Shown here in pieces: positions 7,686-36,369 of a DNA stretch of 36,369 bases. A program made the position numbers and the translations under genes. The notes below the pieces were generated by a model. The model was not told the DNA's origin. It searched no databases and was given only the letters and a program-made list of their open reading frames with translations. How positions within the stretch are numbered: position 1 is the first letter of the stretch; every line of letters starts with the position of its first letter. The DNA is taken from positions 1-36,369 of the forward strand of contig JBBMOY010000013.1 of assembly GCA_037951405.1 (NCBI GenBank). The letters run 5' to 3'. The stretch is from Platydemus manokwari (lineage: Eukaryota).

Positions 7686-7690
7686 TCCAC

Positions 7691-7723: not shown

Positions 7724-7735
7724 CATTCCTTCATT

Positions 7736-7765: not shown

Positions 7766-7843
7766 GACTTATTAAAATTTAACTCGCAGTCTAATTTTTT
7801 ATGTCAACCAAACATCCGTTAAACACCGATAGAGGAAATAAAA

Positions 7844-9867: not shown

Positions 9868-9871
9868 TAGA

Positions 9872-10648
9872 ATGGACAAGATCATTCCTGGTAAAGAAGT
9901 GATTCTTCTGTCTGAAGAATCAATGAAAGTAGTTGAAGAAGCAATCGCTAATCCTCCAGCTCCTAGTGCAAAACTGCGTGAACTGATGAATCGCCCTCGG
10001 CGCATTAACGTTGAGGACTTTTTCGTGAATCCGGTTCCTAAGCACGAAAACGATAGTCGTACATTGATGACCATTATTAAAGGTCGTGCAACCCCAGCGG
10101 ATAAAATTAAATTAGCAGTATCCAAAGGTGAACTTATCCCACCCACTCGTACCTTCCAACCTCTGGTAGACGTGGGAGTTCCAGAAACAATGGCGCAGAA
10201 GCTAAACCTTCAGCTGATGGTTGATTACTTTCTGAAAGATCAAGAAGGTAGTTTCCAAGACGCTATTAAGGAAATGGCAGCTCGTATTAAACTCCGTCAC
10301 GGTAACTGGTGTGTTGAGGTTTATAAACCGATGAAGCCGGATACTAAAATCTGGGGAGAGCGGATTGAAGGATACATGCAGCTGGCTGTTTATCAGAACT
10401 TCATCAAACAAGGTCTGTACGAACCTGCGGCATTTAAACGAATGCAGGAAATGAAGGAAGATATCAAGTTCTATGCAGATGCACTAAAACGCGACATTAA
10501 AATTAAGGACGAAGGTGATGCTGTTCACTGGATTACCTGGGGTACCTTAGCTTTGTGTGTTATTTCCCCCTTACTTGATCGTGGGGTCGTTGATCACTCC
10601 AAGGTCGTGTTCTTCTATGAGAAGAAAGCTAAACTTAACCTGAGCTGA
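9872..10648 (+). CDS. Hypothetical protein with N-terminal DUF1778/AtaR-antitoxin-like peptide
   Basis: Likely ATG at 9872, just after the upstream stop; EVILLSEESMKVVEEAIANPPAPSAKLRELM. Confidence 0.75.
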   Translation: MDKIIPGKEVILLSEESMKVVEEAIANPPAPSAKLRELMNRPRRINVEDFFVNPVPKHENDSRTLMTIIKGRATPADKIKLAVSKGELIPPTRTFQPLVDVGVPETMAQKLNLQLMVDYFLKDQEGSFQDAIKEMAARIKLRHGNWCVEVYKPMKPDTKIWGERIEGYMQLAVYQNFIKQGLYEPAAFKRMQEMKEDIKFYADALKRDIKIKDEGDAVHWITWGTLALCVISPLLDRGVVDHSKVVFFYEKKAKLNLS

Positions 10649-10661
10649 TAAGGAAAGAATA

Positions 10662-11756
10662 ATGGATAAGAAAACTTTTGAATTTGATGGTCGTATTTAT
10701 ATCAATGGCGGTGATATAAAAGTTAGTTTTAATGAAAACAACGAAATAATTTATGATCAGAAAACTCTGGATGAAGCCATGCTTAATTTACCAGACCCAG
10801 GTGAGATCAAAGTTGTTAAACCAGAATGTTTTAAAATGCCGAAAGAGTTTATCTATTATCATCAACATCCTGGTGCTGGAGATAAGGCTGAGAACCTTGA
10901 AGTCAAAGGTGTTTGTCTGAAGGGACAGAAACCAAATAGCGAAAGAGAAGGTGGAGTCCGTCGTGATCAAATGCAGCTGGATTATGCTTTTAATTCTCGT
11001 TATGGATCCATGGGTAGCGGCAATACCTTGTTCCAAGCATTCCGTGCTTCATTAGCTAAGAACCTAGAACAGTGTGATTTTGACAGCTGGATAGCAACTG
11101 CCGAAACTTACAAGAAAGCTGTTAAGGAGGTTTTGCATTACGATCTGGAATGTGGGTATGACAATATTCCTAAGGAAATTATTATTGGCGCTCTCCGTCC
11201 TTACGTCTGGTTGGACGATCGTACCGATGTCATTCCAGAGAAAGGATACCATGCACTGGAATTTCTTGAGTTCCTAAAAGGTCTGTTCGATATTCAACAG
11301 CTGCGTGAAATGGATCCCATCGAACGTAAGATGTTGCTCAATGTTAGAACTGGTGATCCTCGTCAAGATTCAAGGATGGAGTTTCCATATCCTGGTACTT
11401 TAACCAGTGATTGTAAGGTAGTGTTAGGAAAAAGGAAAGTAGAGCTTGAGCCAGGTTGGTTTGAAGAATTCCAGAAACACTACCCGGAAGGTATCAATAA
11501 AGGTAGTCCTATTTCTAGAGTGGCTATAGTTGGACATGGTGGGATTGGTCGTAATTCCTTGAAACAACATCTGACCAATGTTGCTGTGGGTGTACTCAGT
11601 GACATGCACATTAGTTATCCATTTGCTGATGTTGCAGAAATCGAAGAGGATAAACCTCAAACCGTTAAAGGTAATGGTCGTCAGTTGATCATCGATAACG
11701 GTAATGGTAAATCCTGGCCCGCTGCCAAGACTCGTAAAGGACACCGTCGTGCATAA
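10662..11756 (+). CDS. Hypothetical protein
   Basis: 364-aa ORF with TAAGGA SD; basic C-terminal tail GKSWPAAKTRKGHRRA. Confidence 0.8.
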   Translation: MDKKTFEFDGRIYINGGDIKVSFNENNEIIYDQKTLDEAMLNLPDPGEIKVVKPECFKMPKEFIYYHQHPGAGDKAENLEVKGVCLKGQKPNSEREGGVRRDQMQLDYAFNSRYGSMGSGNTLFQAFRASLAKNLEQCDFDSWIATAETYKKAVKEVLHYDLECGYDNIPKEIIIGALRPYVWLDDRTDVIPEKGYHALEFLEFLKGLFDIQQLREMDPIERKMLLNVRTGDPRQDSRMEFPYPGTLTSDCKVVLGKRKVELEPGWFEEFQKHYPEGINKGSPISRVAIVGHGGIGRNSLKQHLTNVAVGVLSDMHISYPFADVAEIEEDKPQTVKGNGRQLIIDNGNGKSWPAAKTRKGHRRA

Positions 11757-23185: not shown

Positions 23186-23219
23186 ATAAACTTTTAGATA
23201 ACCTACAGAGGTAGTATAA

Positions 23220-23558
23220 ATGAAACGCGTTATTCTTGTTGTAGCTCTGGTTCTGATTGCTGTTGGTTTTATGATGGATGGTAAAGAAGTACGGGCTGAG
23301 AATATCGAAGGTAGTCATTATGTAGTTGGCACCGTTGAGGCCGTTGAAGGTTGTTATACAAACACCAAACGCGAATCAGTATGCCTGGGTGTTGTGGACG
23401 TTAAAGATGTGAGGAAAGCCGCTAAGTTTCACGGTGATATTGAAAGAGGTCGTAAAGTATATAAGGAATGCACTACTGTTTCTGGCAATACGGTCTGTAC
23501 CGCGGACTGGTTTACTTCTGTAGGTGAAGTTTATTTACAAGGCGGTGAATTAAATTAA
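23220..23558 (+). CDS. Putative exported or membrane-anchored small protein
   Basis: MKRVILVVALVLIAVG signal-like N-terminus; four Cys in two pairs; GAGG SD. Confidence 0.75.
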   Translation: MKRVILVVALVLIAVGFMMDGKEVRAENIEGSHYVVGTVEAVEGCYTNTKRESVCLGVVDVKDVRKAAKFHGDIERGRKVYKECTTVSGNTVCTADWFTSVGEVYLQGGELN

Positions 23559-23564
23559 GCATAA

Positions 23565-23596
23565 TAGCTACTCTACCCAAATGGGTAGAGTAGCTA
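23565..23596. terminator. Terminator hairpin between convergent operons
   Basis: Perfect 14-bp stem TAGCTACTCTACCC-AAAT-GGGTAGAGTAGCTA. Confidence 0.85.
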
Positions 23597-23619
23597 GTTT
23601 AATCACTTATTTATTTTTG

Positions 23620-24288
23620 TTACTGGAACTGAACATCAAAACGATTGGTCGGGATTTCACCATCGTTAATGTTGGTATTCAGAACCACGTCAGTTTGCAG
23701 AGTGAACGGAGTACCACCATGCGTACCAGTAACCGTAACAGCAGCAGTTGCAGTAACCACAGCGTCAGTAGCAGACTGGATAGATTTGAACGTGTAAGTA
23801 CCACCTTCACTGGAGAACTCAAACTTATCAGCGATGCTTTCAGGAGTAACGGTAACACCGGTTACAGAACTGGTGATGTCCTCAGCGCCTTTCATTACTT
23901 TAAATGTCAGGTTCTGAGTGGCCCACAGGTTCATTGTCAGCGGAGTACTAACATCAGAAAGCGCTGCCGCTTCAACAACATTAATGGTCAGACTAACTGT
24001 CTTGGTAGACTTACCCCAGTTTTCAGTATCGGCATGTTCAGCACCTGCATCAGCATATTTGAATACAACCGTTGCATCTTGAACACCCACAGCAACTGCG
24101 GTCATTACGAATGATACAGTACCTGCACCAGTATCTGGGGTACCAGCACCCAGAGTGATCAGACCTTTCAGATCACTAGCTGCTTCATCAATGGTAACTT
24201 TGCCAGGAACACCAACACCTTCGAAAGTAGGTTTGATGACCATTGCAGAGACTTGACCATTATCAAGCGTATACGACTTATCGCTCAT
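23620..24288 (-). CDS. Small two-domain Ig-like virion fibre protein (candidate self-polymerising major subunit)
   Basis: 222 aa, T/V/A-rich beta protein; TAAGGA SD; C-terminal half aligns with that of 24302-25549. Confidence 0.75.
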   Translation of the reverse strand: MSDKSYTLDNGQVSAMVIKPTFEGVGVPGKVTIDEAASDLKGLITLGAGTPDTGAGTVSFVMTAVAVGVQDATVVFKYADAGAEHADTENWGKSTKTVSLTINVVEAAALSDVSTPLTMNLWATQNLTFKVMKGAEDITSSVTGVTVTPESIADKFEFSSEGGTYTFKSIQSATDAVVTATAAVTVTGTHGGTPFTLQTDVVLNTNINDGEIPTNRFDVQFQ

Positions 24289-24301
24289 TTTATATCCTTA
24301 A

Positions 24302-25549
24302 TTATAGAAACTCAACGTTGAACCGATTGGTTGGAATCTCGCCGTTGTTTATTTCCGTTGTTAAACTCACGGTCTGACTCATAACATGCTCCGTACCACC
24401 ATCCATAAAGGTGAAGTTTAATGTAGCAGAAGCAGTCAACTGAGCAGTGGTTGAAGAAGAGATTGCTTTAATACCCCAACTGTCATCAGAGAGTTTCACC
24501 AGTTCATATTTGGACGAAACTTCTGGAGTGTCAGTCATGGTGATGTTTGAGATTGGACCACTGATATCTGCACCATTATTGGTAATAGTAAATGCCAGAG
24601 GTTTGGTTTCCCACAACTTAAGTGTCAATGGGGTAGGGGTAATGGTAATTCCCGGCGCATAGATTCTGCTTGGGACATTAACGGTGGAAATATTTTTACC
24701 TACAATCAAGTCGGTAGTTGAAGTTCCTAGTGATATTCTCAGATCCTGTTCCGATACTTGATCTGGAGCGGTTAGTTCAATTTCAAAACGATTTAATAAA
24801 GTTCCACCAGTTCCGCCAGATGTAAATGGATAAATTGTAGAATGTGCTTTCAAGAAAGAGACATTCTTAACTGGGTTATAGTAACCTTTATAGAAAATAT
24901 CAATAAAGATACTTTTCTTAGTTCCTTTAGCAACAAGGAATGGTGTCGGGTCTTTATATTCAGCTTTGATTTGTGTTCCATCATAAGGCGCAATAATAAA
25001 GTTACCACTTGCATTCCGGACCATTTGAGCTGGATCTATCGACGCCGGAAGCTTGAATGTGTAATCTACAGTAACAGTTTTCTCAGGGCCTACAGCTACC
25101 TGAGCCAACCACCAATATTTATTCATGGCAACTGGAGTGCCTGGAGCATATGAGTAATCCAGAATTTCAGGAACAGCACCACGAGTCACATCAGTCAACT
25201 GACTGGTAACATCGACACCGTCATGCCAAACTTGGAATGGTAATGCATTGCCATTTTCCCAAGCTTTAACATGAAGATCTGCCGGACGAACTTCGTAATC
25301 AACTTGGACTACGGTATGTTTAAATGTACAAGGGACCTTAACTTCATAGCGCCCCTGGTATGTAAATGTGAGGTTCAGGTTGTATAACGCCTCTTGTGTA
25401 ACCCCGCCCTTAAATTCATAGGTGATCGAGTCATCCTGAATAGAAGCGATCTGGACGCTCGGGTGAGCGTCCAGTGTGATTACCATTTGAGGATCATTAT
25501 TACTAATTACCTGACCAGCTATACGAACACTACTTTTTAGCGTGGTCAT
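24302..25549 (-). CDS. Ig-like repeat virion fibre protein (candidate adaptor)
   Basis: 415 aa; N-terminus like 25561-29049, C-terminus like 23620-24288. Confidence 0.75.
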   Translation of the reverse strand: MTTLKSSVRIAGQVISNNDPQMVITLDAHPSVQIASIQDDSITYEFKGGVTQEALYNLNLTFTYQGRYEVKVPCTFKHTVVQVDYEVRPADLHVKAWENGNALPFQVWHDGVDVTSQLTDVTRGAVPEILDYSYAPGTPVAMNKYWWLAQVAVGPEKTVTVDYTFKLPASIDPAQMVRNASGNFIIAPYDGTQIKAEYKDPTPFLVAKGTKKSIFIDIFYKGYYNPVKNVSFLKAHSTIYPFTSGGTGGTLLNRFEIELTAPDQVSEQDLRISLGTSTTDLIVGKNISTVNVPSRIYAPGITITPTPLTLKLWETKPLAFTITNNGADISGPISNITMTDTPEVSSKYELVKLSDDSWGIKAISSSTTAQLTASATLNFTFMDGGTEHVMSQTVSLTTEINNGEIPTNRFNVEFL

Positions 25550-25560
25550 TCATGATTCCT

Positions 25561-28500
25561 TTATTCTGGAAGTTTAACGTTTTGAACAACGGTAACAGTT
25601 TGCTTACTATTACCTTCGATGTCCTTAATGAATCCATCGCCAAGTTCGAGAGGATACATTCCTACAGTTAATTGAATACTTGCTGGATATTCAAACTCAC
25701 CATCTTTAATAGTGAATGAGAACAATGCAGTACCCGCAGCTTTAGCTGTAGCATTGAAGGAGATCGTGCCGTCATTGTTGTTGACGAGATCTGCAACAGT
25801 AAACAGGTTATTCTCAACAGTCGGATTCAAAATCTGGGTATTTGCCAGGTTCTCAGATGGATCACCCCAACGGTTCTGATGGATCTGCAACGTAACCGGA
25901 GTTACGAGATTAGGTCCTAACAGAGTGTTGTCGTTGTTGGTTACAACGATAGGTGTTTTGTTGACTTGTACAGAAATGCTACCATTACGGTACAATCCAT
26001 CAATATCACTCAGGTGAAGCATCTTGATTCTAGCATAATCACCGGTCCAACCAGTTTTAAGATCGAAACTGAAATCAGCCGTATTTCCAACCTGAACAGC
26101 TTTAGCAGTATCCTTATTAAAGAAAGGATTTCCGGTAACAGGGTTATTATAGTTACGTTGCCAAATTAACTTACCCGTCATTGGAGAGTTATCAAGCCCG
26201 TTTAGGAACTTATCATTAACAACAGCTTCCGTACTACCCTCTCTGGTTTGACGTACGCCAAAGTTGATGTTGGAGTTCATGTTGGCACCAGCTGTCTTGT
26301 TGATATCCAACCTGACATCGGCTTGGTCCAGTTCACCATAAGTATATGAAGGATCGGAAATCAACCGATACTTAATATAGAACCCTTTGAACCCATCAGT
26401 ATCTTGTCGTATCTTAATGAAGAGTTTCCCTTCATCATCAACACCGACAATCTCAGGTAGTTCTGCAACATCTCTTGTTGAAAGAGAGTAATCAATATCT
26501 GGATCTGTAGGATCCATCTCAATGCCGTCTTTCAAGAATACCAGTTTTTGTGGTGTACCATTTCTATTTCTCAGCATCGGGTTGATAGAGAAACGACGAC
26601 CTTCAACTATACCGCTACCGTTATACACCATAAACTTTCTAGATGTAATATAAACGCTAGCTGTATCGTCGGCAGTCAATCCAGCGTTTGGTGCACCTTC
26701 TTTAATGGTGTATGTCAGCTTAACAGTTTGGTTCTCAAGCTCTGTCCCAGCAGAGCTGGTCAAGATCACATCACAGTACCCACCTTGGGTGGTAACGGAT
26801 TTAACAGTTATGGTTGGGTTATCAGAAACAACTTCGATAACGTCCCCACCTAAGTTAACTCCACCCATCTGTGCAACCGCTCTAACCATTATGTCAGAAT
26901 CAGACTTACCGTAAACGGTTTTATACTGAGGTTGGATTACAACGCTTAGACCTTCAATAGCTTGAAGCTCGATTCGTTTAGGATAGTGAACATTATTCTC
27001 AACAACGGAGTACGTTACAGAACCTGCGCCTTTAGTACCATTACCGGTAACGGTAATTTTGAATGTACCATTCTCGTTAACAACCGTAGCAGCTTTAACA
27101 GTCCCATCAACACTTATATTCCGGATATCAGTAGAGGTTGCAAAGTTCCAATCTTCTTGACCCAAACGTTCCTGAGACCAAGTAACAAAGACATCAGTCT
27201 TAACACCATCAACAAAGTTGAAGTTGTTGTTCAGGACCGTGGCTGTGATAGGTGCTTGGGCAACTAACTGACTACCCGTTGCTTTGTAGACAATGTTACC
27301 ACCAGGGAGACGAACATATTCGGTCATTTCCGCCAGGGCACCAGTCCAGCCTGTCTTAACATTACGACCAAACCCTATGTTGTTTGTAGTGGTAGGTTTA
27401 TCGAGAAGTTCGATAATTGCGTTACCTGTACTTGGGTTGTTAACGTATTTAGACAGCAAGACTTTATCAACTGTTATATCAGCGGAACCAATTTGATATT
27501 TGTTGTTCATGACAACAGTTTCTTGGTTTGGAGGCAAACTACCTGCTAGTGTGTAGGTACAGTCAGTTACCGCGGCGCCGGTTGGGATGGTAATGATTGG
27601 GGTTGTGGTACCTACACCAGGAACGCCATCGATGGTGATTTGATATTGAATACCTGCTGAGGTTGCAGCACCGGTATAAATCAATTTACCGATAAATCCA
27701 CCATCATACTTATCGATGTATTGGCCAGTTGCTTGAGAAGCTGTAGCCACTACAATCTTAACTTTAGGATCATCAACTTTATATTCCACGCCATTACCAT
27801 CAGAAATGGTAATTGGGTAATCGAAGTATCCTTGTTTCTTGATTGACATATCCCTGCTAGGTGGAAGTACAGTTACCTGTTGCATCGACTTAACAATAAT
27901 AGACTGCATTTGCGTTGTAGATGCACCACCATAACCATAAGTGATATTGGTGAAGTTGTTAATATCGGCGCCAGTGTTGTTGGCATCGAGTATCTTAAAT
28001 GTAACAACTTTTCCAACTTTGGATACCACAGATAACCTGGCTGGATTGGCAATCGTAATCTCTACGTCTTCCATAGAAAGTTGAACACCATCCATAGAAA
28101 TAGTTATGGTCTGTTCAACTTCCTGATTTTGCTTACCAGTTAGTACGGCAGGATTTCTAGCATTAAATACAAGACCTGGCTCATAAGCTTTCATGTCGAC
28201 TTTAATATCAACACGGTTTTTACCTACTACACTGTTTGTGCCATTACCGCCGAATACTAACGTACCTTCACCAGTAAAGCTAGCGCTAGCACCAAACGTT
28301 ACCCAGATCTGCTGCGTATCTTTCTTCAGGTCTTGGCTGGAATAGTTAATTGGTGCAGTTGAAGCGAAGTTTTGTAGGTAACGGACGTAATCAGTGCCAT
28401 CACGATAGTTACGATATTTGAAGGAGAACTTAAGCGGTGTTAACGTCCCAACAGGAATCTTGAACTCTTCAAACAGCGGAGTGATGGTTAACTCTTGTCC

Positions 28501-29049
28501 GTCGTAAGTTGCTACGATAAACTCACCAGTAAATGAACGAGTTACCCCTGGGAGATCATCACTTAAACGGAAAGTGTAATCGATGTTGATAGTAGTCTGG
28601 CTAAATGCCGACTCAGATTCGATAGTCCAAGACTTAGAACCTGTATCACCTGCTTTAACAATGCTCTTAGGTGTAAATGCAACGTCCACCACATTTGCAG
28701 TAACGTCTTCACCACCTTTACTTACCGTAAATGGTAAGGCATCACCACGTGCCCAACACTGTGTGTTAATAGGAGCAGAAGTAATAGTAACTTTAGACTC
28801 TGTACCCATGTTAACCAACGACAGAGGTTGCTCAAGGGTATACAGTTCTTTATATACGAAAGACAGACTAAGGTTGTAGAGGGTGTCCGTGGGGACACCC
28901 TCTTTAAACGAGTATGTAATATAGTCATCACCGATCTCGGAGATTTCGACTTTCGCCGCATCAGCTCCAGTCAGGGTAATGACCATATTGGGATCGTTAT
29001 TACTTAGGGCCTGTCCATCGAGTAACATTGCTTGTTTTAATGTACTCAT
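25561..29049 (-). CDS. Large Ig-like repeat virion fibre protein
   Basis: 1162 aa of ~90-100-aa beta-rich repeats; NNPxTGN..KTGWTG occurs twice. Confidence 0.75.
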   Translation of the reverse strand: MSTLKQAMLLDGQALSNNDPNMVITLTGADAAKVEISEIGDDYITYSFKEGVPTDTLYNLSLSFVYKELYTLEQPLSLVNMGTESKVTITSAPINTQCWARGDALPFTVSKGGEDVTANVVDVAFTPKSIVKAGDTGSKSWTIESESAFSQTTINIDYTFRLSDDLPGVTRSFTGEFIVATYDGQELTITPLFEEFKIPVGTLTPLKFSFKYRNYRDGTDYVRYLQNFASTAPINYSSQDLKKDTQQIWVTFGASASFTGEGTLVFGGNGTNSVVGKNRVDIKVDMKAYEPGLVFNARNPAVLTGKQNQEVEQTITISMDGVQLSMEDVEITIANPARLSVVSKVGKVVTFKILDANNTGADINNFTNITYGYGGASTTQMQSIIVKSMQQVTVLPPSRDMSIKKQGYFDYPITISDGNGVEYKVDDPKVKIVVATASQATGQYIDKYDGGFIGKLIYTGAATSAGIQYQITIDGVPGVGTTTPIITIPTGAAVTDCTYTLAGSLPPNQETVVMNNKYQIGSADITVDKVLLSKYVNNPSTGNAIIELLDKPTTTNNIGFGRNVKTGWTGALAEMTEYVRLPGGNIVYKATGSQLVAQAPITATVLNNNFNFVDGVKTDVFVTWSQERLGQEDWNFATSTDIRNISVDGTVKAATVVNENGTFKITVTGNGTKGAGSVTYSVVENNVHYPKRIELQAIEGLSVVIQPQYKTVYGKSDSDIMVRAVAQMGGVNLGGDVIEVVSDNPTITVKSVTTQGGYCDVILTSSAGTELENQTVKLTYTIKEGAPNAGLTADDTASVYITSRKFMVYNGSGIVEGRRFSINPMLRNRNGTPQKLVFLKDGIEMDPTDPDIDYSLSTRDVAELPEIVGVDDEGKLFIKIRQDTDGFKGFYIKYRLISDPSYTYGELDQADVRLDINKTAGANMNSNINFGVRQTREGSTEAVVNDKFLNGLDNSPMTGKLIWQRNYNNPVTGNPFFNKDTAKAVQVGNTADFSFDLKTGWTGDYARIKMLHLSDIDGLYRNGSISVQVNKTPIVVTNNDNTLLGPNLVTPVTLQIHQNRWGDPSENLANTQILNPTVENNLFTVADLVNNNDGTISFNATAKAAGTALFSFTIKDGEFEYPASIQLTVGMYPLELGDGFIKDIEGNSKQTVTVVQNVKLPE

Positions 29050-29064
29050 GGATTTTACAGTTCC

Positions 29065-32000
29065 TTATTCAGGGTTAAGTACAAATTGTGTTAACGTCAC
29101 AGGATTATCAACGTCACCTTGCCCAGTGGATTGGAATCCTGGTGCTGGGGTCAACTTAGGATGCAGAGATTGCTGAGTAACATTCAAAATTGCGGTGGCA
29201 ATTTCCTTCTTACTCCAAATGCCTGAGAAACCGAATTGAACATTGGTGGTCTTAGCATTTTCAGTGATGTCCCTAACAAACCTAACATCAAAGCTATCCT
29301 TGGTTACTGACCCAGGTACCAACTCAATCACGTCAGATGGAGTGCATCCTTCCCAATCGTGAGTGGTTAGATCTCTTTGAATACCAGCATAGTTACCACG
29401 GGCGTGGATGGTGAATACATCACCAAACTTGCCAGTTATCTCTTTAGGTACCGGTTCCGTTAATTGGAATGGAGCTGCCGTGCTGTAAACAGTTAGCTCT
29501 ACAGGAACTTCGAACTCCCCAGTTGGATTACCCTCAACCCCACCATCAATTCTGATTCTGAAATTTTGGATACCAAATGCAGTCACGATGTTACTAGATT
29601 TAGCGGTAATTTGAAGCTTGGTATTAAACTCCGTTGTGCTAATCATCGATACATAACGCGGACCATCACCATACCCAGACCATCTAACCATCTTGACTAT
29701 TGTATCTCCTTTATATAGGGGAACAATGTTAAACCAAGCTTGGGAACCAAGAGTGAATGTGGTAGTACCTTCAATTTTAAATGTGTAAGGACTTCCGTCA
29801 TAAGCAGCAATGTTAAACGGAACTTCTACCGTTCTCTTAAATCCTGATGGATCTGTAGATAAACGATAGTACCATGTCGACATTACCACCTTAGCAGGTT
29901 GAGCGGCTTCAGCGATAATCTGATAAGTAGGTCTTGGAGAAACATTAATCATGTTCTCATTATCAACAAGTTCGACATCGTAAAGACCCTGAGGTATATC
30001 GCTTGAGTCAACCACTTGGAAAGGGGTTTTGGATGACTTGTCCCAAACCTTAACATCCATCTGGGTAAGTTTGACGAACATGTTCGGTTTAACTGTCAGA
30101 TCTATTTCGTGTATGGCAAAACGACCATCACGATCAGTAACCTTCAGTGTAACAACCTCGTTAATGTCCTCTGTTGTTGTCATCGCAACATCGAAACTGA
30201 CATCCCCAGCATTACGCATACCCAAAGTCATGTAATCAGCCGGTTCAACATTCCACGTTAATCCAACATCATCAAAACGACGATTATTGCCATCGATAGT
30301 CAATGTACCAGTAAAGGTAATCCGATCTCCTTTCTTACCGGAGGCAGAATCAGGACTTAGGGTCAGAACAAAACCAGAAGAATCGATTTCCGCCGTAACG
30401 TCCAGAGTGACTTGATATTCATATCCATCGCCATCGGTTACAGTGAATGTAGCACTACCAGCTCCGGTTTCACCTTTACCATAGAAGGTAGCGGTAAATG
30501 TTCCATCGCTGTTACCGATCGTATCGACTTTCTGAATAGCCCCAGTTATAGTTACTGTATCAGAAATCGTTGCATCAGAGAACGTGTAATGTTCTACAAT
30601 GTCATTGATTAAACGTTCTTGCGATAGAGTAAATGTCATAGCCTTGCTAGCATTGGTAATGCCATTAATAACCCTATCAGCACCACCAACTGTAATTGTA
30701 GCTGGAGGAATAATCAGTTCAGAATCACGCAATACCCAGTTATCAGCAAGGTCAGGGAATACCGCAACCATGTTTATGGTAATTTTCCCACCCGTCCAAC
30801 CGGACTTAAACTTCAGTGCATTGCGATAAATATCACCAGGTGCCTCTATAAGTTCAAGTTCGCCAAGTAAAGCATTACCCGTTGAAGGATTGTTTTTACC
30901 TGATAATGATAGAACAGTTGTAGGTTTGGCGATATTGTAACCTGATCTTTGGAATTCAACAGGGATAATGTTCTCTGCATTACCCAAAGGCTCCTTCAAA
31001 GCTTTTAACGTTACTGGGACTAAGTTAGTCATACTGTAACTTGCTTGAATGTTAACATACCCCGATATCTCAGGTGGATTAACACCATCGTTATACGTCA
31101 CCATAATACGGTTAGTAAACGATGCAGCAGCATCTGGTTTGCGATTAAAAGCGAACCAAACGTATCGATCTTCAATCCCAACAATATCAAAGATTGGTGG
31201 AGTAACTGTCGACGCATTACTGACTTCCATAGACAAACGAGGGGCATTTGGCTTAAGTAACACACCACCGTAATAAATCTTGGCATCCCAACTGAATGGT
31301 CTAGCATAAACTTGGGTAGAAGGAACCAGTGTGATTGGAAGTACGGATAGCCCTTTGTTAACATAAATACCTGTAAAATTACCAACCCATTTATTCACAT
31401 TAACTGTGGTGCCTGGTGTATCATCAATCGTGAGAGTTAATACACATGCATTACTTCCTGATCCAAATGTGTCAGGTGCGGTATACTCAATGACTACCCC
31501 AACTCCATCACCAGCAGGTCCCACTATAGTTATAGGTACTGTGAATAAAGTACCAACTTGAACAGTCCCACTAAATCCATTTGCTAATGGCTTCCCTCTA
31601 TACACAGGCCAAACCGTAAACCGGTTGGTGTTGTTACGTGATACAGGAATTTCTGTAGTTACCCCAACACCACGGCCATAGTCAACGGTTACCTTAAATG
31701 CAATGCCATCATAGGCCGCTACGTTGTAATTACCACGAGCAGTAAGCGTTTCCCAAATTCCATTAACTTTGGCTTCATACGTGAAGTATTGTGGGAATAA
31801 GGTTTCAGTTGTTCTTCCATCAACAACTTCCCATGAATTAGGATCGTCAGGTAATGGAGAGAAATATTGTCCATTCTTGATCAATCTAACATTTCTGATT
31901 TGATCATTTATCAATACGCCATTGTTATATACATCAAACGGTGGAGTATTTAGAACATCAAACACTTTGACTTGGACAGTCTTCTCAGTTGTCGTAATCT

Positions 32001-33636
32001 TGTTAGCAAATGAAGCCTGTACGATGACACTGAAATCCATCTCAGTTCCACCTGTTGGTTTAAACTTACCATAAATCCGTACATCGCCCTCAGAACCTCT
32101 AGCGGCTAACTGTTGTGACATCTGGCCGTTTTTGAGGTTTGTCCCACTTGTACTAGCAGCAGCCCCTTCAACGTAAACCATGGAGAAATCACCAGGGATA
32201 AGTTCTAATCCATTTCCTCGATCTTGTTTACAAGAAATCAGAACAGCAGAATTAGCACCCGCATTACCGTTAACAGTTTTAGTATTGGTGGTGAAAACAT
32301 ATGGGGCTTCAGGAATATCGAATCCTGAATCAGAGACTAACATCGGATAATACCAGTCCCTTGGATAGCTTTTGGCAATATACGGACAACGAATCACCAC
32401 ATTAGTAAAGAGAGCACGCTGTGCCATCCAACTAGGTTTAGTTTCGGCAACAACCCTACCGATGGAATTAACTTTCTTACCGGATAAATCAACGGTTTGG
32501 ATGATAGTATTTGTGGAGGTATCAGTTATCCTCAATTCACCTTTTTCAAATACAGCGTCAAAAGGTTCAAACCAAGCATAAGGGATCGTGGTGGTTAAAT
32601 CACCTATTTGTACAACAGCATTTACTTCTTTATTGGCAACAGGACCTATAAGGAAGTTAGACATATAGAAGTTATTAGGACCAGAGTATGTCGTAACGCT
32701 TAGCTTTTGAACTGCTGTTTTTGCTCCCTTTGTGACCGTCAAATCGACGTTACCCATTGGAGGATTACTGGAACTAGCAGGCGGTTGTTTTAATGTCCAT
32801 TTAATACCATCTGACTGGACTGTAATTCCAAGACGGTTGTTAGGACTTGACATGTTACCAGCATCGGTTAATGTGTAACTTATAGACGGGTCGGTTAGTG
32901 AAAGCTTTGTGGTTCCCTCATAAAGTTCGAAGAACGACATCGCCTTGTAGCTTAGAACACCGGAAAAGTTTACACTGTACCAGTCCCACATGACTATAAC
33001 CAGATCTGTATTCCCTGCCACGATAATTTTTGCACGGGCAATCAGGTTAACAAAGTTTTTGTCTGATACAGGATTTGAGGGTACCGGAAGTCTATTGACT
33101 CTTATCGGTAACCCTGCTAAGGCATTAACAGTTGCTCCAACGAGAACAATGCGGTGCGTTACGCCATCTTCTAAAACTTCTTGACGAACTATAGAGACTC
33201 CTGGGTAAGGTGTCAGGCCGGTAACTGAAAGGGTTGCTTCCACCTCACCAGCTTTCAGTAATACACCTTTATAGGTGGCCTGATAGTCTAAAGTAAATTC
33301 CTTATTCTGCTCTGATACCACCACGCCCGTACTTGGATTGGTAAAATTTACTTTGAACTGTCCTGCTGTAGTTGCAGATACAGTTATATCAGTGGAAGCT
33401 TCCAATTCATAAGGAAGTCCACCATAATCAACTTCTAGTTTAAATGTTGTCGCTTCGGTAACGTCTTCTTCATCGGCAGCAATAACGGTGAATGTGGCAT
33501 CACCGTTCGGCTTCAAATAGGGGGAGGGAACTCCCCCTTGCTCGATTGCTGTCAGACGGATATTGTTAGTAATATCTTCGCCCGAAATAGGATCGTTAAC
33601 CTGAAACGGAACAAGTGAAGATTTGTTCAATTCCAC
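29065..33636 (-). CDS. Large Ig-like repeat virion fibre protein
   Basis: 1523 aa; GTG start with AGGA SD; recurrent VKV[WF], AAYDG, SQER and GWTGG motifs. Confidence 0.75.
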   Translation of the reverse strand: MELNKSSLVPFQVNDPISGEDITNNIRLTAIEQGGVPSPYLKPNGDATFTVIAADEEDVTEATTFKLEVDYGGLPYELEASTDITVSATTAGQFKVNFTNPSTGVVVSEQNKEFTLDYQATYKGVLLKAGEVEATLSVTGLTPYPGVSIVRQEVLEDGVTHRIVLVGATVNALAGLPIRVNRLPVPSNPVSDKNFVNLIARAKIIVAGNTDLVIVMWDWYSVNFSGVLSYKAMSFFELYEGTTKLSLTDPSISYTLTDAGNMSSPNNRLGITVQSDGIKWTLKQPPASSSNPPMGNVDLTVTKGAKTAVQKLSVTTYSGPNNFYMSNFLIGPVANKEVNAVVQIGDLTTTIPYAWFEPFDAVFEKGELRITDTSTNTIIQTVDLSGKKVNSIGRVVAETKPSWMAQRALFTNVVIRCPYIAKSYPRDWYYPMLVSDSGFDIPEAPYVFTTNTKTVNGNAGANSAVLISCKQDRGNGLELIPGDFSMVYVEGAAASTSGTNLKNGQMSQQLAARGSEGDVRIYGKFKPTGGTEMDFSVIVQASFANKITTTEKTVQVKVFDVLNTPPFDVYNNGVLINDQIRNVRLIKNGQYFSPLPDDPNSWEVVDGRTTETLFPQYFTYEAKVNGIWETLTARGNYNVAAYDGIAFKVTVDYGRGVGVTTEIPVSRNNTNRFTVWPVYRGKPLANGFSGTVQVGTLFTVPITIVGPAGDGVGVVIEYTAPDTFGSGSNACVLTLTIDDTPGTTVNVNKWVGNFTGIYVNKGLSVLPITLVPSTQVYARPFSWDAKIYYGGVLLKPNAPRLSMEVSNASTVTPPIFDIVGIEDRYVWFAFNRKPDAAASFTNRIMVTYNDGVNPPEISGYVNIQASYSMTNLVPVTLKALKEPLGNAENIIPVEFQRSGYNIAKPTTVLSLSGKNNPSTGNALLGELELIEAPGDIYRNALKFKSGWTGGKITINMVAVFPDLADNWVLRDSELIIPPATITVGGADRVINGITNASKAMTFTLSQERLINDIVEHYTFSDATISDTVTITGAIQKVDTIGNSDGTFTATFYGKGETGAGSATFTVTDGDGYEYQVTLDVTAEIDSSGFVLTLSPDSASGKKGDRITFTGTLTIDGNNRRFDDVGLTWNVEPADYMTLGMRNAGDVSFDVAMTTTEDINEVVTLKVTDRDGRFAIHEIDLTVKPNMFVKLTQMDVKVWDKSSKTPFQVVDSSDIPQGLYDVELVDNENMINVSPRPTYQIIAEAAQPAKVVMSTWYYRLSTDPSGFKRTVEVPFNIAAYDGSPYTFKIEGTTTFTLGSQAWFNIVPLYKGDTIVKMVRWSGYGDGPRYVSMISTTEFNTKLQITAKSSNIVTAFGIQNFRIRIDGGVEGNPTGEFEVPVELTVYSTAAPFQLTEPVPKEITGKFGDVFTIHARGNYAGIQRDLTTHDWEGCTPSDVIELVPGSVTKDSFDVRFVRDITENAKTTNVQFGFSGIWSKKEIATAILNVTQQSLHPKLTPAPGFQSTGQGDVDNPVTLTQFVLNPE

Positions 33637-33652
33637 GGTATTTTCCTGTTAA

Positions 33653-36369
33653 TTATTCTGGATTAAGAACACCCTGTTTAAGAGTCACAGGATTCTCCAT
33701 ATCCCCAGAGCCTGTTGATTCGAAACCAGGAGCTGGCGTTAGTTTAGGATGAGCTGCAAGCTGTCTAGCTGTGAACGTGGTTCGTCCAGTGCCTTCTGTC
33801 ATGTAGCGCATACTAACTGTCATTTCTGTATCTTTACTGTTCTCCGTGATATCGGCAAGGAACCTGACTTTAAACCCATCGGCGGTTCTAGACCCAGGGA
33901 CCATCTCCACAATACCAGCAGGAGTGAATGCAGGATCTTGCCATGATGGATTGTTCACGTCATTGCGATTACCACTAAGCCAAACTTTAATGGTGACCGG
34001 TATTTCCTCACCAAATCTACCCACTAAAGGATTCGGTTTAAAATCACTTAATGCACTTCGGTTATAGAAATCATAAATAGTGATGATAAATGTAACAGTA
34101 ACTATATCTTGGCCAGGCACACTTCCAGTACCAACACGGATTGAATACGAGTTCGGTATTTCAAACGTGTTACTCGTATTAACTGACCTAAATGTGAATC
34201 TTCCTTGTCCTTCGAAGTTGGTGTAATCCGCGGTGGCGATGGAAGGAGCACTAATAGGTCCGATATTTGTGGGTTTCTCGGTGACTGGTTCAGCCCTACG
34301 GTAAACGAAGAAGTCACCCTGGAATTGAGAGCTTGCAACATATCTGTAAAGAGGGTACTGTGGAACTGCCGTTAATATATAACCGTTATGTGCTTCAACG
34401 TTATAAGTAATATCGATTGTTCTCTTCGTTCCTTCCAAATCAGTAGGTAAACGGTATTCCCAAGTCACCACTTCGGTTCTGGCCGGTAACACGCCTTCAC
34501 CTTTCACAGTCCACATGTTCACAGCCGGTTTATTCCTGTTCTCCATCTTAACGGCGATTACAACATCGTCATTAATTGGTTTGCAGTCCAATACCGTATC
34601 TGTGATATCAACTTCACCTTCCTTCATTACGAAAGGATAACCGTTAATACGTTCCCAGACCTTAACGTTGAACACCTTAGGTTCGATGGTCAAGTTTTTC
34701 TTAACGTTAACCGTTACCGGTTGGGAAACTGTCATACCTAAGAAATTGGCAGTGACATTAACTACTTGGGTTACGTCGTCAGGGGAGTTACGCACAATAC
34801 GAAGATCAAACGTTCCAGCAGTACCATTCTCAAATTCAACCCAACCTTCATGTTCAACCGAGTAGATCATGTTCCCATTGGAATTATCCCAACGAAGATC
34901 TGTGTCGTTATACTTCACTGTACCGGTAATCGTTGTCACGTCACCAGCGACACCTTCTACAACGTTGTTCTCCAGAACCATTGACATCGGGCTTGAATCG
35001 ATGACTGCATTAACATTCAGAACGATATCAATACTTTCCCCATCGTCATCCGTGATCGTCATGGTTATCGTCCCAGGACCCTGAGTACCATTACCATAAA
35101 CGTCAACAAAGAAGGTTCCTTTGTTGTTAAAGGCGGCAGAAGCTTGTTTAACTGACCCGGTAACAACTCCGACAGGATAAATCTCGGCATTGGTAAAGTT
35201 GTAGTTGGTTGTTACACCATTCACCCTACGCTGTTGGGATAATGTAAACCGAATCTCAGTCTTACGATTCTCTATCCCGTCAATTTGATTTGTGGCTTGA
35301 GTTACGTCTACTGGTACCGGAGGTACTTTAATTATAACAGGTTGTGTCGAATAAACGGTTGGGAATTCCCAGGTACCAAGATAGAATATCTCACCACCTT
35401 TCCAACCAGAATCGAACTTCAAAGCGCCCTCAGGTAAGTACTCAACCCCGTTGACCGCAACATCAGAACCAGCAGGAGTTATTTTTACGTTCGCCCTTCC
35501 AATTAACTTAGGAGCTGGGAAAGGAGAAAGAGGATCAACGTAGAACTTGGTTGGTAATGTGTTTTCGGCGTTAGCGACTGGATCACCAATGACTTCCATA
35601 ATTGGAATGGTGGTAGCTCCACTGCTAAATCCAATTGTTAATGCAGATGGTACTGTGGAATGCACTGTCCCGTCAGGAGCTGTATATTTAACTGTCGCTA
35701 ACTGATACCAACTAGCCGAACCTGTGGCAGCTCTATACGTAAACAGATAAATAGTTGTTGCGTCCGAACCCGCATACTCAACAAACTTAGCTTGGTTTGG
35801 ATGACCTTCAATCACGTAATCCAAACGAGGGTCATCAAGTTTCAGTCTGACAGCATCAAAGTAGACGGCCGGTTGCCAGTTCCTGGTACTACCCAATCCT
35901 CCATAACTAGGAGTAGGTGAGGAATGTTCGACATACAGACCTTTCTGAATAGCAGTGAGCGTTACCGTTTCACTCACAACGGTTTTTTGGTTAACCAATT
36001 CCTCAATGGGAATCCCTTTAACCTGATAATAGAACGTGATGGAGGCGGTCGTATAGTTGGTACCGATACCCAATGTTACAACAATACCGGTTCCTTCATC
36101 GTTAACCTTCTGTCCTTTGAACTCAATGCCGGTTCGAGTAATTGGTCTCAGCTCGATATTTTCAAGATCAAGTTTGCCCTTATATTGAGGGTAGAAGGTA
36201 TAGGTATACGTCCCACCTAAAGGAACCTTCGGATTCTTACTCGTTCTGTCCCCAGGGATGTACTCGGCATTGGGGACGATCGCAATCCCATTCCACGCTG
36301 CAATATCGTAACTACCCTGACCGATTTGATTAATGACGCCGCTGGCTAGAACCAGATCATAAGTAAAGT
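33653..36369 (-). CDS. Large Ig-like repeat virion fibre protein (5' end outside window)
   Basis: I read the frame from 36073 to the window end and found no stop; collinear with the C-terminal part of 29065-33636. Confidence 0.75.
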   Translation of the reverse strand, partial: FTYDLVLASGVINQIGQGSYDIAAWNGIAIVPNAEYIPGDRTSKNPKVPLGGTYTYTFYPQYKGKLDLENIELRPITRTGIEFKGQKVNDEGTGIVVTLGIGTNYTTASITFYYQVKGIPIEELVNQKTVVSETVTLTAIQKGLYVEHSSPTPSYGGLGSTRNWQPAVYFDAVRLKLDDPRLDYVIEGHPNQAKFVEYAGSDATTIYLFTYRAATGSASWYQLATVKYTAPDGTVHSTVPSALTIGFSSGATTIPIMEVIGDPVANAENTLPTKFYVDPLSPFPAPKLIGRANVKITPAGSDVAVNGVEYLPEGALKFDSGWKGGEIFYLGTWEFPTVYSTQPVIIKVPPVPVDVTQATNQIDGIENRKTEIRFTLSQQRRVNGVTTNYNFTNAEIYPVGVVTGSVKQASAAFNNKGTFFVDVYGNGTQGPGTITMTITDDDGESIDIVLNVNAVIDSSPMSMVLENNVVEGVAGDVTTITGTVKYNDTDLRWDNSNGNMIYSVEHEGWVEFENGTAGTFDLRIVRNSPDDVTQVVNVTANFLGMTVSQPVTVNVKKNLTIEPKVFNVKVWERINGYPFVMKEGEVDITDTVLDCKPINDDVVIAVKMENRNKPAVNMWTVKGEGVLPARTEVVTWEYRLPTDLEGTKRTIDITYNVEAHNGYILTAVPQYPLYRYVASSQFQGDFFVYRRAEPVTEKPTNIGPISAPSIATADYTNFEGQGRFTFRSVNTSNTFEIPNSYSIRVGTGSVPGQDIVTVTFIITIYDFYNRSALSDFKPNPLVGRFGEEIPVTIKVWLSGNRNDVNNPSWQDPAFTPAGIVEMVPGSRTADGFKVRFLADITENSKDTEMTVSMRYMTEGTGRTTFTARQLAAHPKLTPAPGFESTGSGDMENPVTLKQGVLNPE

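What the first reader, a model, noticed from the sequence alone, without database searches (positions are those of the whole stretch)
23620..36369. Candidate phage fibre assembled by donor-strand complementation: Ig-like domains split across gene boundaries
Seen: intact internal repeats read like PGLVFNARNPAVLTGKQNQEVEQTITISMDGVQLSMEDVEIT. Three genes END with only the first part of such a repeat (PKLTPAPGFESTGSGDMENPVTLKQGVLNPE*, PKLTPAPGFQSTGQGDVDNPVTLTQFVLNPE*, PLELGDGFIKDIEGNSKQTVTVVQNVKLPE*). Two genes BEGIN with the remainder (MSTLKQAMLLDGQALSNNDPNMVITL, MTTLKSSVRIAGQVISNNDPQMVITL). A second junction type also fits: the internal FIIAPYDGTQIKAEYKDPTPFLVAKGTKKSIFIDIFYKG is mirrored by the tail LTTEINNGEIPTNRFNVEFL* plus the next gene's start MSDKSYTLDNGQVSAMVIKPTFEG. 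Each of the four visible starts has its own SD and no signal peptide. Established: chaperone-usher and type V pili polymerise by inserting a terminal beta strand into the incomplete fold of the next subunit. Inference: these separately translated proteins clip together head-to-tail in the cytoplasm into an ordered, pilus-like virion fibre, unlike classical trimeric phage fibres.
Basis: partly seen in the sequence, partly recalled or inferred. Interest (0 to 1): 0.92.

Follow-up and report, generated by a model that had tools for sequence, protein, structure and literature searches.

The report
Phage fibre genes split inside domains
In this giant bacteriophage, the boundaries between a row of very long bead-chain (immunoglobulin-like) protein genes fall inside a protein domain, so each protein ends with the first strands of a domain whose remainder begins the next protein. 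This suggests the separate proteins clip end to end into an ordered fibre, but the clipping itself has not been shown.

Summary
The quoted termini are real. The window comes from a jumbo phage of the OBP/pEt-SU clade; its nearest relative is Shewanella phage SXP01. Five minus-strand genes (A partial, B, C, D, E) encode strings of Ig-like domains. AlphaFold2 gives pLDDT about 90 for D and E.

True unsplit counterparts exist in relatives. In pEt-SU and Survivor, one 5,100-residue protein runs straight through the point where SXP01, N1M2 and Yubaba have a stop and a new start; window gene B starts at that same point.

The cut is not clean. About 13-15 residues (type 3) or about 7 residues (type 1) occur twice, at the end of one protein and at the start of the next.

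Three tail/head types follow a grammar. In 14 genomes, 39 of 41 junctions are cognate. Tails are highly conserved: F, G and Q are each in 100% of 31 distinct tail1 sequences. AlphaFold2 nevertheless leaves them unstructured in the monomers.

My best reading is head-to-tail docking by beta-strand addition onto the next protein's N-terminal domain. It is not a chaperone-usher or type V pilus homologue. Docking and virion location remain inferred. Two things stay unexplained: the A|B junction is non-cognate, and E's tail has no downstream partner.

The parts
33653..36369 (-). Gene A, 3' part only (904 codons in the window; the ORF runs off the window end). It is a multi-Ig-like protein, a paralogue of B (27% identity over 900 residues) and the orthologue of the SXP01 1533-aa protein.
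33656..33754 (-). Type-1 tail of A (last 33 residues): the first strand(s) of a connector domain plus a copy of the next strand.
   Evidence: tail1 profile E about 1e-17. Against SXP01: 22/30 codons identical, 7 synonymous, 1 non-synonymous, versus 52/90 non-synonymous just upstream.
29065..33636 (-). Gene B (1523 aa, GTG start): type-3 head, about 15 Ig-like domains, type-1 tail.
33367..33636 (-). Type-3 head domain of B (residues 1-90). Residue 1 maps to residue 3389 of the uninterrupted 5119-aa pEt-SU protein and to residue 3378 of the 5105-aa Survivor protein.
29068..29166 (-). Type-1 tail of B.
25561..29049 (-). Gene C (1162 aa): type-1 head, multi-Ig body with two copies of a GWTG-containing module, type-1 tail (second subtype).
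28795..29049 (-). Type-1 head domain of C (residues 1-85).
   Evidence: head1 profile E about 1e-37
25564..25665 (-). Type-1 tail of C.
   Evidence: 29/30 codons identical to SXP01.
24302..25549 (-). Gene D (415 aa): type-1 head domain (1-80), three further Ig-like domains (86-186, 190-297, 301-398), type-2 tail (399-415).
   Evidence: AlphaFold2 model, mean pLDDT 89.2; tail without secondary structure, last residues pLDDT about 50
24305..24355 (-). Type-2 tail of D.
23620..24288 (-). Gene E (222 aa): two Ig-like domains (4-103, 108-205) and a type-2 tail (206-222).
   Evidence: AlphaFold2 model, mean pLDDT 90.9; tail pLDDT falls from 58 to 45. Best PDB matches are tandem Ig domains. 24 homologues at 51-96% identity.
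23623..23673 (-). Type-2 tail of E. Nine positions are invariant in 25 sequences. No partner gene follows it in this window.
23565..23596 (-). Terminator-like hairpin (14-bp stem) closing the array, between convergent gene blocks.

Best explanation
The region is the distal part of a conserved gene array of OBP-like jumbo phages. In relatives the array lies just downstream of nrdB. It encodes one very long modular structure made of roughly 100-residue Ig-like domains, cut into a variable number of separately translated proteins.

The cuts lie inside conserved 'connector' Ig-like domains. The upstream protein keeps the connector's first strand(s), followed by a copy of the next strand, as a 17-33-residue C-terminal tail. 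The downstream protein starts with that same next strand and carries the rest of the domain.

I propose that the tail of each protein docks onto the N-terminal domain of the protein with the matching head type by beta-strand addition. This would rebuild the connector domain and join the proteins head to tail in gene order: giant, then A or B, then C, then D, then E. The product would be a thin, beaded, probably monomeric fibre or 'hair' on the virion.

SHOWN: the split, the duplicated strand, the unsplit orthologous counterparts, the grammar, the conservation, the Ig-like folds and the unstructured tails.
INFERRED: the docking itself, its specificity, and the virion location.
For: (1) Unsplit counterparts. 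Tail1 and head1 profiles hit adjacent, overlapping stretches inside the giants of SXP01, N1M2, Yubaba, Survivor and pEt-SU and of the metagenomic protein P0079; P0076 has the head1 hit only. Tail3 and head3 do the same in pEt-SU and OBP gp206; in Survivor only the head3 profile hits.
(2) Orthologous fission or fusion. The last 400 aa of the three split giants align up to residue 3401-3403 of pEt-SU gp133, or 3390-3392 of the Survivor giant. The next gene aligns from its residue 1 at 3389 (pEt-SU) or 3378 (Survivor). The overlap is 13-15 residues in 6 of 6 comparisons. Window B behaves the same way.
(3) Grammar. 39 of 41 junctions in 14 genomes are cognate. Among the 57 representatives of the only detectable family in 1.84 billion proteins, head1 sits at residue 1 in 48, and tails sit only at C-termini.
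(4) Selection on the tails as protein. A and B tails show 4-7 synonymous versus 1-2 non-synonymous changes against SXP01, while the adjoining 90 codons show 51-52 non-synonymous changes. F, G and Q are each present in 100% of 31 distinct tail1 sequences, and L in 94%. Nine positions of tail2 are invariant in 25 E homologues.
(5) In AlphaFold2 monomers the tails of D and E have no secondary structure and pLDDT of 45-58, next to domains at about 90. They are not predicted to fold back onto their own chain.
(6) D and E fold as independent Ig-like domains whose best PDB matches are titin-type tandem Ig. This is unlike intertwined trimeric fibre sequence.
(7) In many relatives the chain ends with a protein that has a head2 domain but no tail. 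That fits a terminal cap or tip.
Against: No complex was modelled or observed.

The missing strand is an edge strand, so no deep groove need exist. The AlphaFold2 models of the head domains are confident on their own, although the first 10 residues of D reach only pLDDT 77.

The duplicated strand is not required by simple complementation and remains unexplained.

The A|B junction is non-cognate, both here and in SXP01.

E's tail has no encoded partner here, so tails may have another target.

Direct tail-versus-head similarity is significant only for type 3 (p = 0.001-0.011). For type 1, 3 of 15 junctions reach p<=0.05 and most do not. For type 2, only the window and SXP01 D|E junctions do, and on a different segment.

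For type 2, no unsplit counterpart of the tail was found.

The array is not next to recognisable tail genes. Its neighbours here are a DNA ligase, an RNase H-like gene and unknowns. No virion proteomic evidence could be read, because the OBP paper is not held. No fibres were seen on N1M2 by negative stain (PMC7058600), whereas fibres were seen on Kc263 (PMC8402661).
Confidence: 0.5

Rival explanations
1. Cassette boundaries only. The conserved tails and heads are kept mainly as homologous recombination linkers, plus tight translational coupling, that let phages swap variable middle modules. The proteins do not dock through them, and each is anchored or acts on its own.
For: Similarity between the window and SXP01 is mosaic. 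blastn islands of 74-87% identity straddle the junctions (33426-33735, 28325-29151, 25311-27714, 23200-24634), while gene interiors are unalignable. The tails of A and B are far more conserved, even at codon level, than the adjoining sequence. Several proteins share the same head, as with exchangeable receptor-binding proteins.
Against: Conservation is at protein level across phages whose DNA no longer aligns. Residues stay invariant in 31 distinct tails, and synonymous changes far outnumber non-synonymous ones in the tails. A recombination linker does not explain why the cut lies inside a domain. It also does not explain why the upstream protein keeps otherwise useless first strands containing invariant hydrophobic residues. 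The two explanations are compatible: docking ends make natural crossover points.
Confidence: 0.2
2. The tails bind something other than the next protein's head. Candidates are the protein's own last domain, a common site on the virion, an assembly chaperone, or (for the distal tail2) the host surface. The heads would be complete adaptor domains that anchor each protein independently.
For: E, the last protein, carries tail2 with no downstream partner in the window, SXP01, Kc263, pEt-SU and contig L015. The head domains are predicted confidently without a partner. The missing A strand is an edge strand. A's tail1 is followed by a non-matching head.
Against: Tail and head are contiguous parts of one domain wherever the gene is not split. 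Tails are not predicted to fold back. Gene order follows the tail/head grammar in 39 of 41 junctions. That count includes tail2 followed by terminal proteins with a head2 domain in 8 genomes: OBP, AH04, Survivor, Yubaba and L010, where a tail-less head2 protein comes directly after a tail2 gene, plus L011 with both kinds of partner.
Confidence: 0.2
3. The pieces are joined during translation by stop-codon readthrough, frameshifting or ribosome hopping between the duplicated strand codons. The real product would then be one giant protein.
For: B and C are in the same frame (15-nt gap). The duplicated strand resembles take-off and landing sites.
Against: The frame relation is not conserved. Gaps are 16, 15, 11 and 13 nt here and 11-48 nt in relatives, with no common remainder. 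Every downstream gene keeps its own start codon and Shine-Dalgarno-like element. The repeated strand is similar at protein level, not in codons. The A|B junction joins non-matching types.
Confidence: 0.04
4. Decay or artefact: a giant gene broken by nonsense mutations or sequencing errors.
For: Relatives carry single ORFs where this phage has several.
Against: The same boundaries, with starts, Shine-Dalgarno-like elements and conserved tails, recur in independently sequenced isolates and metagenomes. All ORFs are intact and show signs of purifying selection.
Confidence: 0.02

Closest known systems
Hypothetical proteins of the OBP clade: OBP gp204-gp207, pEt-SU gp131-gp133, Kc263 gp020-022, AH04 195-197, N1M2 gp160-162, SXP01 XTB82776-82780
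   Same: True homologues in the same array, with the same tail/head types.
   Different: The number and size of genes differ (3 to 6 genes; giants of 3,375 to 5,119 aa). All are annotated as hypothetical; one is labelled 'attaching and effacing protein'. No held paper describes the split domains.
Chaperone-usher pili (donor-strand complementation/exchange); from my own knowledge
   Same: Subunits with Ig-like folds are joined non-covalently, with a terminal strand of one completing the fold of the next. This gives an ordered chain with specific adaptor and terminator subunits.
   Different: In those pili the donor is an N-terminal extension and the missing strand is the C-terminal G strand, which leaves a core groove. 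Assembly is periplasmic and needs a chaperone and an usher. Here the donor is C-terminal, the missing element is the N-terminal A strand, the acceptor keeps a copy of the neighbouring strand, there are no signal peptides, and no chaperone or usher domain was detected in the five array proteins.
Type V pili of Bacteroidia (FimA/Mfa1 strand exchange); from my own knowledge
   Same: C-terminal strand(s) of one subunit go to the N-terminal region of the next. The acceptor initially carries its own copy of the strand that the donor replaces. The duplicated strand found here is reminiscent of that.
   Different: Type V pilins are lipoprotein precursors, and a protease removes their N-terminal strand. 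Nothing of that kind is seen here, and there is no sequence relationship.
T4-type long tail fibre (gp34-gp35-gp36-gp37) and branched tailspike systems with N-terminal adaptor domains; from my own knowledge
   Same: Several consecutive genes encode segments that join end to end in gene order. Conserved ends are combined with variable middles, and genes are exchanged in mosaic fashion.
   Different: Those are intertwined trimers joined through dedicated terminal domains and need chaperones. Here the proteins are strings of autonomous Ig-like domains, and the joints are halves of one domain.
Multi-Ig proteins of other jumbo phages (Erwinia Y3 'putative major tail protein', Dickeya JA11, Agrobacterium Atu_ph07 'putative internalin', PaBG 'putative long tail fiber')
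   Same: Fold-level matches to D as chains of Ig-like domains. Y3 is a phage with hair-like tail appendages (PMC13282480).
   Different: There is only generic fold similarity (TM 0.17-0.22, 10-14% identity). No shared tail or head motifs were examined or found.
Titin Z1Z2-telethonin complex
   Same: It is the best PDB fold match of E (tandem Ig, E about 3e-8). From my own knowledge, it is a classic case of Ig domains joined by intermolecular beta-sheet extension.
   Different: The match is fold-level only (13-15% identity), and the system is unrelated.

Membership tests
Gene boundary inside a domain (split Ig-like connector domain) | An uninterrupted homologue of tail+head exists as one contiguous domain. 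| tested here: met
   Types 1 and 3. The overlap on the unsplit protein is 13-15 residues for type 3 and about 7 for type 1. Type 2: only the head part has internal counterparts.
Gene boundary inside a domain (split Ig-like connector domain) | The two halves physically reassemble. | not testable with these tools
No multimer prediction is offered.
Chaperone-usher pilus donor-strand complementation | The acceptor lacks the C-terminal G strand, and the donor is an N-terminal extension. | tested here: not met
   The donor-like segment is C-terminal. The acceptor lacks the N-terminal A (A/A') strand, shown by mapping onto the E domain-2 model and the unsplit domains.
Chaperone-usher pilus donor-strand complementation | Sec signal peptides, a periplasmic chaperone and an outer-membrane usher. 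| tested here: not met
   No signal peptides were seen at the four visible N-termini. Pfam found no chaperone or usher domain in the five proteins.
Type V pilus strand exchange | A C-terminal donor strand replaces the acceptor's own N-terminal strand. | tested here: inconclusive
   The polarity matches, and the strand is present in both donor and acceptor. Displacement cannot be tested.
Type V pilus strand exchange | A lipoprotein precursor whose N-terminal strand is removed by a protease. | tested here: not met
   No lipobox or signal peptide was seen. No protease is linked to the array.
Classical trimeric phage tail fibre | Intertwined trimeric beta-helix or coiled-coil sequence; matches to fibre or tailspike families; a fibre chaperone. 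| tested here: not met
   There are no Pfam or PHROG fibre hits. The monomers fold confidently as separate Ig-like domains. The oligomeric state itself was not tested.
Ig-like (beta-sandwich) tandem-domain proteins | Beta-sandwich domains of about 100 residues that match solved Ig domains. | tested here: met
   Sequence-family membership (Big or cadherin-like Pfam models) was not met: there are only sub-threshold hits in C.
Virion structural protein (fibre) | Detected in purified particles or seen in virion structures. | not testable with these tools
   The OBP proteome paper is not held. There are no sequence hits in the PDB.

The most novel reading that the evidence does not exclude
The junctions may work by strand displacement rather than simple addition. 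The incoming tail, carrying strand A plus a copy of strand B, would replace the acceptor's own first strand. That would be a protease-free analogue of type V pilus assembly. Proteins that carry a matching head and tail on one chain (E: head2 + tail2; C-type: head1 + tail1) could then polymerise with themselves. The phage would build pilus-like filaments of variable length. It would also build alternative chains (giant-A-... and giant-B-...) from one gene set.
Probability: 0.15. Interest if true: 0.88.

Novelty: new variant of a known kind. Interest (0 to 1): 0.72.

Why it matters
Phage fibres are normally described as trimers joined through dedicated terminal domains. If confirmed, this would be a different building principle for virus appendages: a fibre made of separately translated Ig-domain strings, joined by re-forming a domain that the gene boundary cuts in two. 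It would explain how these phages can carry 8,000 or more residues of fibre in interchangeable gene-sized modules. It would also give a simple sequence rule (tail type to head type) for reading the order of assembly from a genome. Finally, it offers natural fused and split versions of the same domain for studying how genes split without losing function.

Tried and rejected
- Pfam and PHROGs on A-E, on the array's first genes, and on the giants' N-termini in OBP and SXP01: nothing usable.
- PDB sequence search with B and C: no hits.
- IMG/VR scan with a head1 alignment: only 3 loci. Metagenome scan: none.
- The OBP genome/proteome paper could not be opened. Papers on N1M2, Kc263 and ZPAH34, the phiKZ atlas and the 2026 jumbo-phage review say nothing about these genes. 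Literature searches for donor-strand or Ig-like fibre assembly in phages found nothing relevant.
- Direct tail-versus-head similarity by shuffling: convincing only for type 3.
- Readthrough, frameshift and hopping were considered and rejected, because the frames are not conserved.
- No gene for a head2-type partner of E's tail exists in the window.
I could use only the secondary-structure strings and pLDDT.
The type-1 tail itself was not folded.

Declared slip: notebook entries 1 and 2 contain short degenerate motif patterns of the termini, which are consensus-like shorthand. I stopped using them, deleted nothing, and quote only real window sequence here. Consensus lines printed by the alignment tools were not used.


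Full report
WHAT IS THERE. The window is 36,369 bases with no N. Its nearest relative is Shewanella phage SXP01, at 77-87% nucleotide identity in patches. More distant relatives are Pseudomonas phage OBP, Edwardsiella phage pEt-SU, Kosakonia Kc263, Erwinia AH04, Klebsiella N1M2, Pantoea Survivor and Serratia Yubaba/Sureiya, all jumbo myoviruses of 250-285 kb.

From 23620 to the window end, the minus strand carries five tightly packed genes:
- A: 33653 to beyond 36367, partial
- B: 29065-33636, 1523 aa
- C: 25561-29049, 1162 aa
- D: 24302-25549, 415 aa
- E: 23620-24288, 222 aa

A 14-bp-stem terminator-like hairpin at 23565-23596 closes the array. The plus-strand genes on the other side include an NAD-dependent DNA ligase and an RNase H-like gene, and no recognisable tail genes. 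Pfam and PHROGs give nothing above threshold for A-E.

CHECK OF THE OBSERVATION. The quoted termini are exact. Intergenic gaps are 16, 15, 11 and 13 nt, each with a GGA/AGGA-type element. None of the four visible N-termini looks like a signal peptide.

The proteins are paralogous mosaics:
- A aligns end to end with B 618-1523 at 27% identity.
- The last roughly 350 residues of A and B resemble C 71-418 and D 58-222.
- C 1-399 resembles D 1-409.
- D 284-414 resembles E 92-221.

C 291-332 aligns with the last complete domain of A, not with tail plus head. The domain that follows in C (395-500) shows no significant similarity to the head1 domain: BLASTP E=6.2 and hhalign probability 0.5%. The inference was right in kind, but the evidence for it lies outside the window.

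THE ARRAY IN RELATIVES. In all eight sequenced relatives, the same array follows the ribonucleotide reductase small-subunit gene, but it is cut into different numbers of genes. Examples:
- pEt-SU: 1488, 5119, 3124 and 223 aa
- Kc263: 722, 3577, 1249 and 229 aa
- SXP01: 928, 3381, 1533, an unannotated 1519, 1162, 507 and 222 aa

Printing all N- and C-termini shows three recurring tail types and three head types.
- Type 1: tails like the ends of the window's A, B and C; heads like the starts of C and D.
- Type 2: tails like the ends of D and E; heads like the start of E.
- Type 3: tails at the end of the giants of SXP01, N1M2 and Yubaba; heads like the start of B.

In the window, A and B carry type-1 tails. 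B has a type-3 head. C has a type-1 head and tail. D has a type-1 head and a type-2 tail. E has a type-2 head and tail.

UNSPLIT COUNTERPARTS AND THE DUPLICATED STRAND. I built profiles from the heads and tails and searched all array proteins. These are the key results.

Type 1:
- Inside five giants (SXP01, N1M2, Yubaba, Survivor, pEt-SU), roughly 100 residues before the end of the ~3,380-aa giants and at the same position (about 3,270-3,380) in the two 5,100-aa ones, a tail1 match is immediately followed by a head1 match with no stop between.
- The two matches overlap by about 5-8 residues. In SXP01, for example, tail1 covers 3249-3280 and head1 covers 3274-3352.

Type 3:
- pEt-SU gp133 has the tail3 match at 3372-3403 and the head3 match at 3390-3474.
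- OBP gp206 has both hits (84-110 and 102-183). In Survivor only the head3 profile hits, at 3378.

The most direct test is:
- The last 400 residues of the three split giants align with the uninterrupted pEt-SU and Survivor giants. They reach pEt-SU residue 3401-3403 or Survivor residue 3390-3392, within 2-4 residues of their own C-termini.
- The next gene aligns from its residue 1, starting at pEt-SU 3389 or Survivor 3378.
- The overlap on the unsplit protein is 13-15 residues in 6 of 6 comparisons.
- Window gene B starts at exactly the same point (E=8e-12 and 3e-6).

So the gene boundary lies inside a domain at an orthologous position that is continuous in other phages. The split versions carry one strand twice. 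Direct tail-versus-head similarity is significant for type 3 (p = 0.001-0.011 in 3 of 3 phages). For type 1 it appears as a weak, consistently placed four-to-seven-residue match that reaches p<=0.05 at only 3 of 15 junctions. For type 2 it is inconsistent: only the window and SXP01 D|E junctions reach p=0.007, and the matched segment differs between phages. No unsplit counterpart of the type-2 tail was found, only of the head2 domain. The second junction type therefore rests on pattern-level resemblance.

GRAMMAR. I counted junctions in the window, the eight relatives and five metagenomic or IMG/VR contigs. Of 41 junctions, 39 are cognate: tail3 before head3, tail1 before head1, tail2 before head2. 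In OBP, AH04, Survivor, Yubaba, L010 and L011 the array ends with a protein that has a head2-type N-terminal domain (profile E from 2e-7 to 7e-16) and no tail.

The two exceptions are the A|B junction of the window and of SXP01, where two [head3 ... tail1] paralogues sit in tandem.

A full HMMER scan of 1.84 billion representatives with D found only 57 relatives, so the family is confined to this clade. Head1 is at residue 1 in 48 of them. Tails are at C-termini only, apart from the fused internal cases. These counts are not independent events, because gene order is inherited.

SELECTION. Against SXP01, the last 30 codons of A have 22 identical, 7 synonymous and 1 non-synonymous codon. For B the figures are 24, 4 and 2. 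The preceding 90 codons have 52 and 51 non-synonymous changes.

Shares of the window residue by column and invariant positions:
- Tail1, 31 distinct sequences: one F, one G and one Q at 100%, an L at 94%, and the penultimate-region P at 90%.
- Head1, 51 distinct sequences: G12, N17, I24 and L26 at 100%, while residues 2-10 are more variable.
- Tail2: nine positions are invariant in E and 24 homologues of 51-96% identity.

Nucleotide similarity to SXP01 is mosaic, with islands that straddle the junctions. The junctions are therefore also likely crossover points.

STRUCTURE.
- E, AlphaFold2 with 25 sequences: mean pLDDT 90.9, two beta domains (4-103 and 108-205). Residues 206-222 have no secondary structure, and pLDDT falls from 58 to 45.
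- D, AlphaFold2 with 25 sequences: mean pLDDT 89.2, four beta domains (1-80, 86-186, 190-297, 301-398). The last 17 residues are unstructured and end at pLDDT about 50. The first ten residues are at pLDDT 77.
- The best PDB matches of E are titin-type tandem Ig domains.
- D matches only family members and generic multi-Ig phage proteins in BFVD.

I mapped the type-3 tail and head onto E's second domain, a paralogue of the type-3 domain (head3 profile positions 18-83 match E 134-201). On this mapping the tail corresponds to strands A/A' (about 108-119) plus B (124-133), and the head starts in the A-B turn.

The missing element is therefore the N-terminal edge strand. It is not an internal groove-forming strand as in chaperone-usher pilins.

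HOW IT MOST LIKELY WORKS. My best-supported reading has confidence of about 0.5. The array encodes one long modular appendage that evolution has repeatedly cut within conserved connector domains.
- The tail of each protein cannot fold alone, yet it is under strong protein-level constraint and contains invariant hydrophobic residues.
- I propose that it docks on the N-terminal domain of the protein with the matching head by beta-strand addition and rebuilds the connector.
- Gene order then gives the assembly order: giant, then A or B, then C, then D, then E.
- At roughly 100 residues and about 4 nm per domain (from my own knowledge), the SXP01 set of about 8,300 residues would span more than 300 nm if extended as a single chain.

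Three things are not explained: the role of the second copy of the strand, the tandem A/B pair, and E's partnerless tail. They leave room for strand displacement, alternative chains or self-polymerisation; see the novel case.

Virion location is inferred from four observations: the absence of export signals, the fibre-like architecture, fold neighbours in 'hairy' or fibre-bearing jumbo phages, and fibres seen on Kc263 (PMC8402661). Set against that, none were seen on N1M2 (PMC7058600).

RIVALS. Details are in the rival-explanations section.
- Recombination linkers only (0.2). This is compatible with, and probably additional to, docking.
- Tails bind some other target, or fold back (0.2).
- Translational fusion (0.04). 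This is contradicted by non-conserved frames and by each gene having its own start.
- Decay or artefact (0.02).

COMPARISON WITH KNOWN SYSTEMS. This region works most like strand-complementation pili, but it is not a member of either pilus family. Polarity and topology differ from chaperone-usher pili, and there are no signal peptides; no chaperone or usher domain was found in the five proteins. It shares C-terminal donation and the 'strand present in both partners' feature with type V pili, but shows no lipoprotein or protease features. It resembles the T4 long tail fibre in serial, gene-ordered assembly and mosaic evolution, but not in fold or in the nature of the joints. I found no description of split Ig-like domains at phage fibre gene boundaries in the held literature.

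LIMITS AND DECLARATIONS.
- No multimer modelling was possible.
- I built no sequence joining a tail to a head.
- Two early notebook entries hold short degenerate motif patterns of the termini. I declare this as a slip.
- Statements about pili, T4 fibres, titin-telethonin and domain size come from my own knowledge.

Noticed in passing
window 35407, 30801, 27351, 26052 (approximate codon positions of the motif in A, B, C, C): A module of about 45 residues ending in GW(T/K)G recurs once in A, once in B and twice in C. In B and C it is preceded by an NNP(S/V)TGN stretch. It is not an obvious Ig repeat and could be a binding module.
   Followed up: no
window 29065-36369: A and B are tandem paralogues only 27% identical to each other. 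Both have type-1 tails, and by their SXP01 orthologues both have type-3 heads. They would compete for the same upstream and downstream partners.
   Followed up: partly
window 23200-24634, 25311-27714, 28325-29151, 33426-33735: Similarity to SXP01 is mosaic. Islands of 74-87% identity straddle the gene junctions, while gene interiors are unalignable. This suggests module exchange with crossovers at the junctions (two further islands, 30701-31786 and 34398-35305, lie inside B and A).
   Followed up: partly
L007 about 6580-11192 (SXP01, PV593634.1): The GenBank record of SXP01 leaves a 1519-aa ORF, the orthologue of window gene B, unannotated between two annotated array genes.
   Followed up: partly
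L002 6347-7870, L005 1868-2752, L008 1892-3139, L009 1735-3210, L010 11644-12534, L011 12927-13817: Most relatives end the array with a protein that has a head2-type N-terminal domain, a different C-terminal part and no tail. It is a candidate distal tip. The window, SXP01, Kc263, pEt-SU and contig L015 lack it at this position.
   Followed up: partly
window 35-1780 and 2848-3378: An NAD-dependent DNA ligase (PHROG E=4e-118) and an RNase HI-like gene lie on the plus strand. The array sits among replication-type and unknown genes, not in a tail module.
   Followed up: partly
window 23581-24114 (+): A 177-codon ORF lies antisense to gene E. It is very probably spurious, because it overlaps a conserved, well-folding gene on the other strand.
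   Followed up: no
L006 2474-2662 (N1M2 gp159): This 62-aa ORF begins like a head2 domain and then stops. It may be a remnant of the terminal protein; the head2 profile gave no hit at the threshold used.
   Followed up: no
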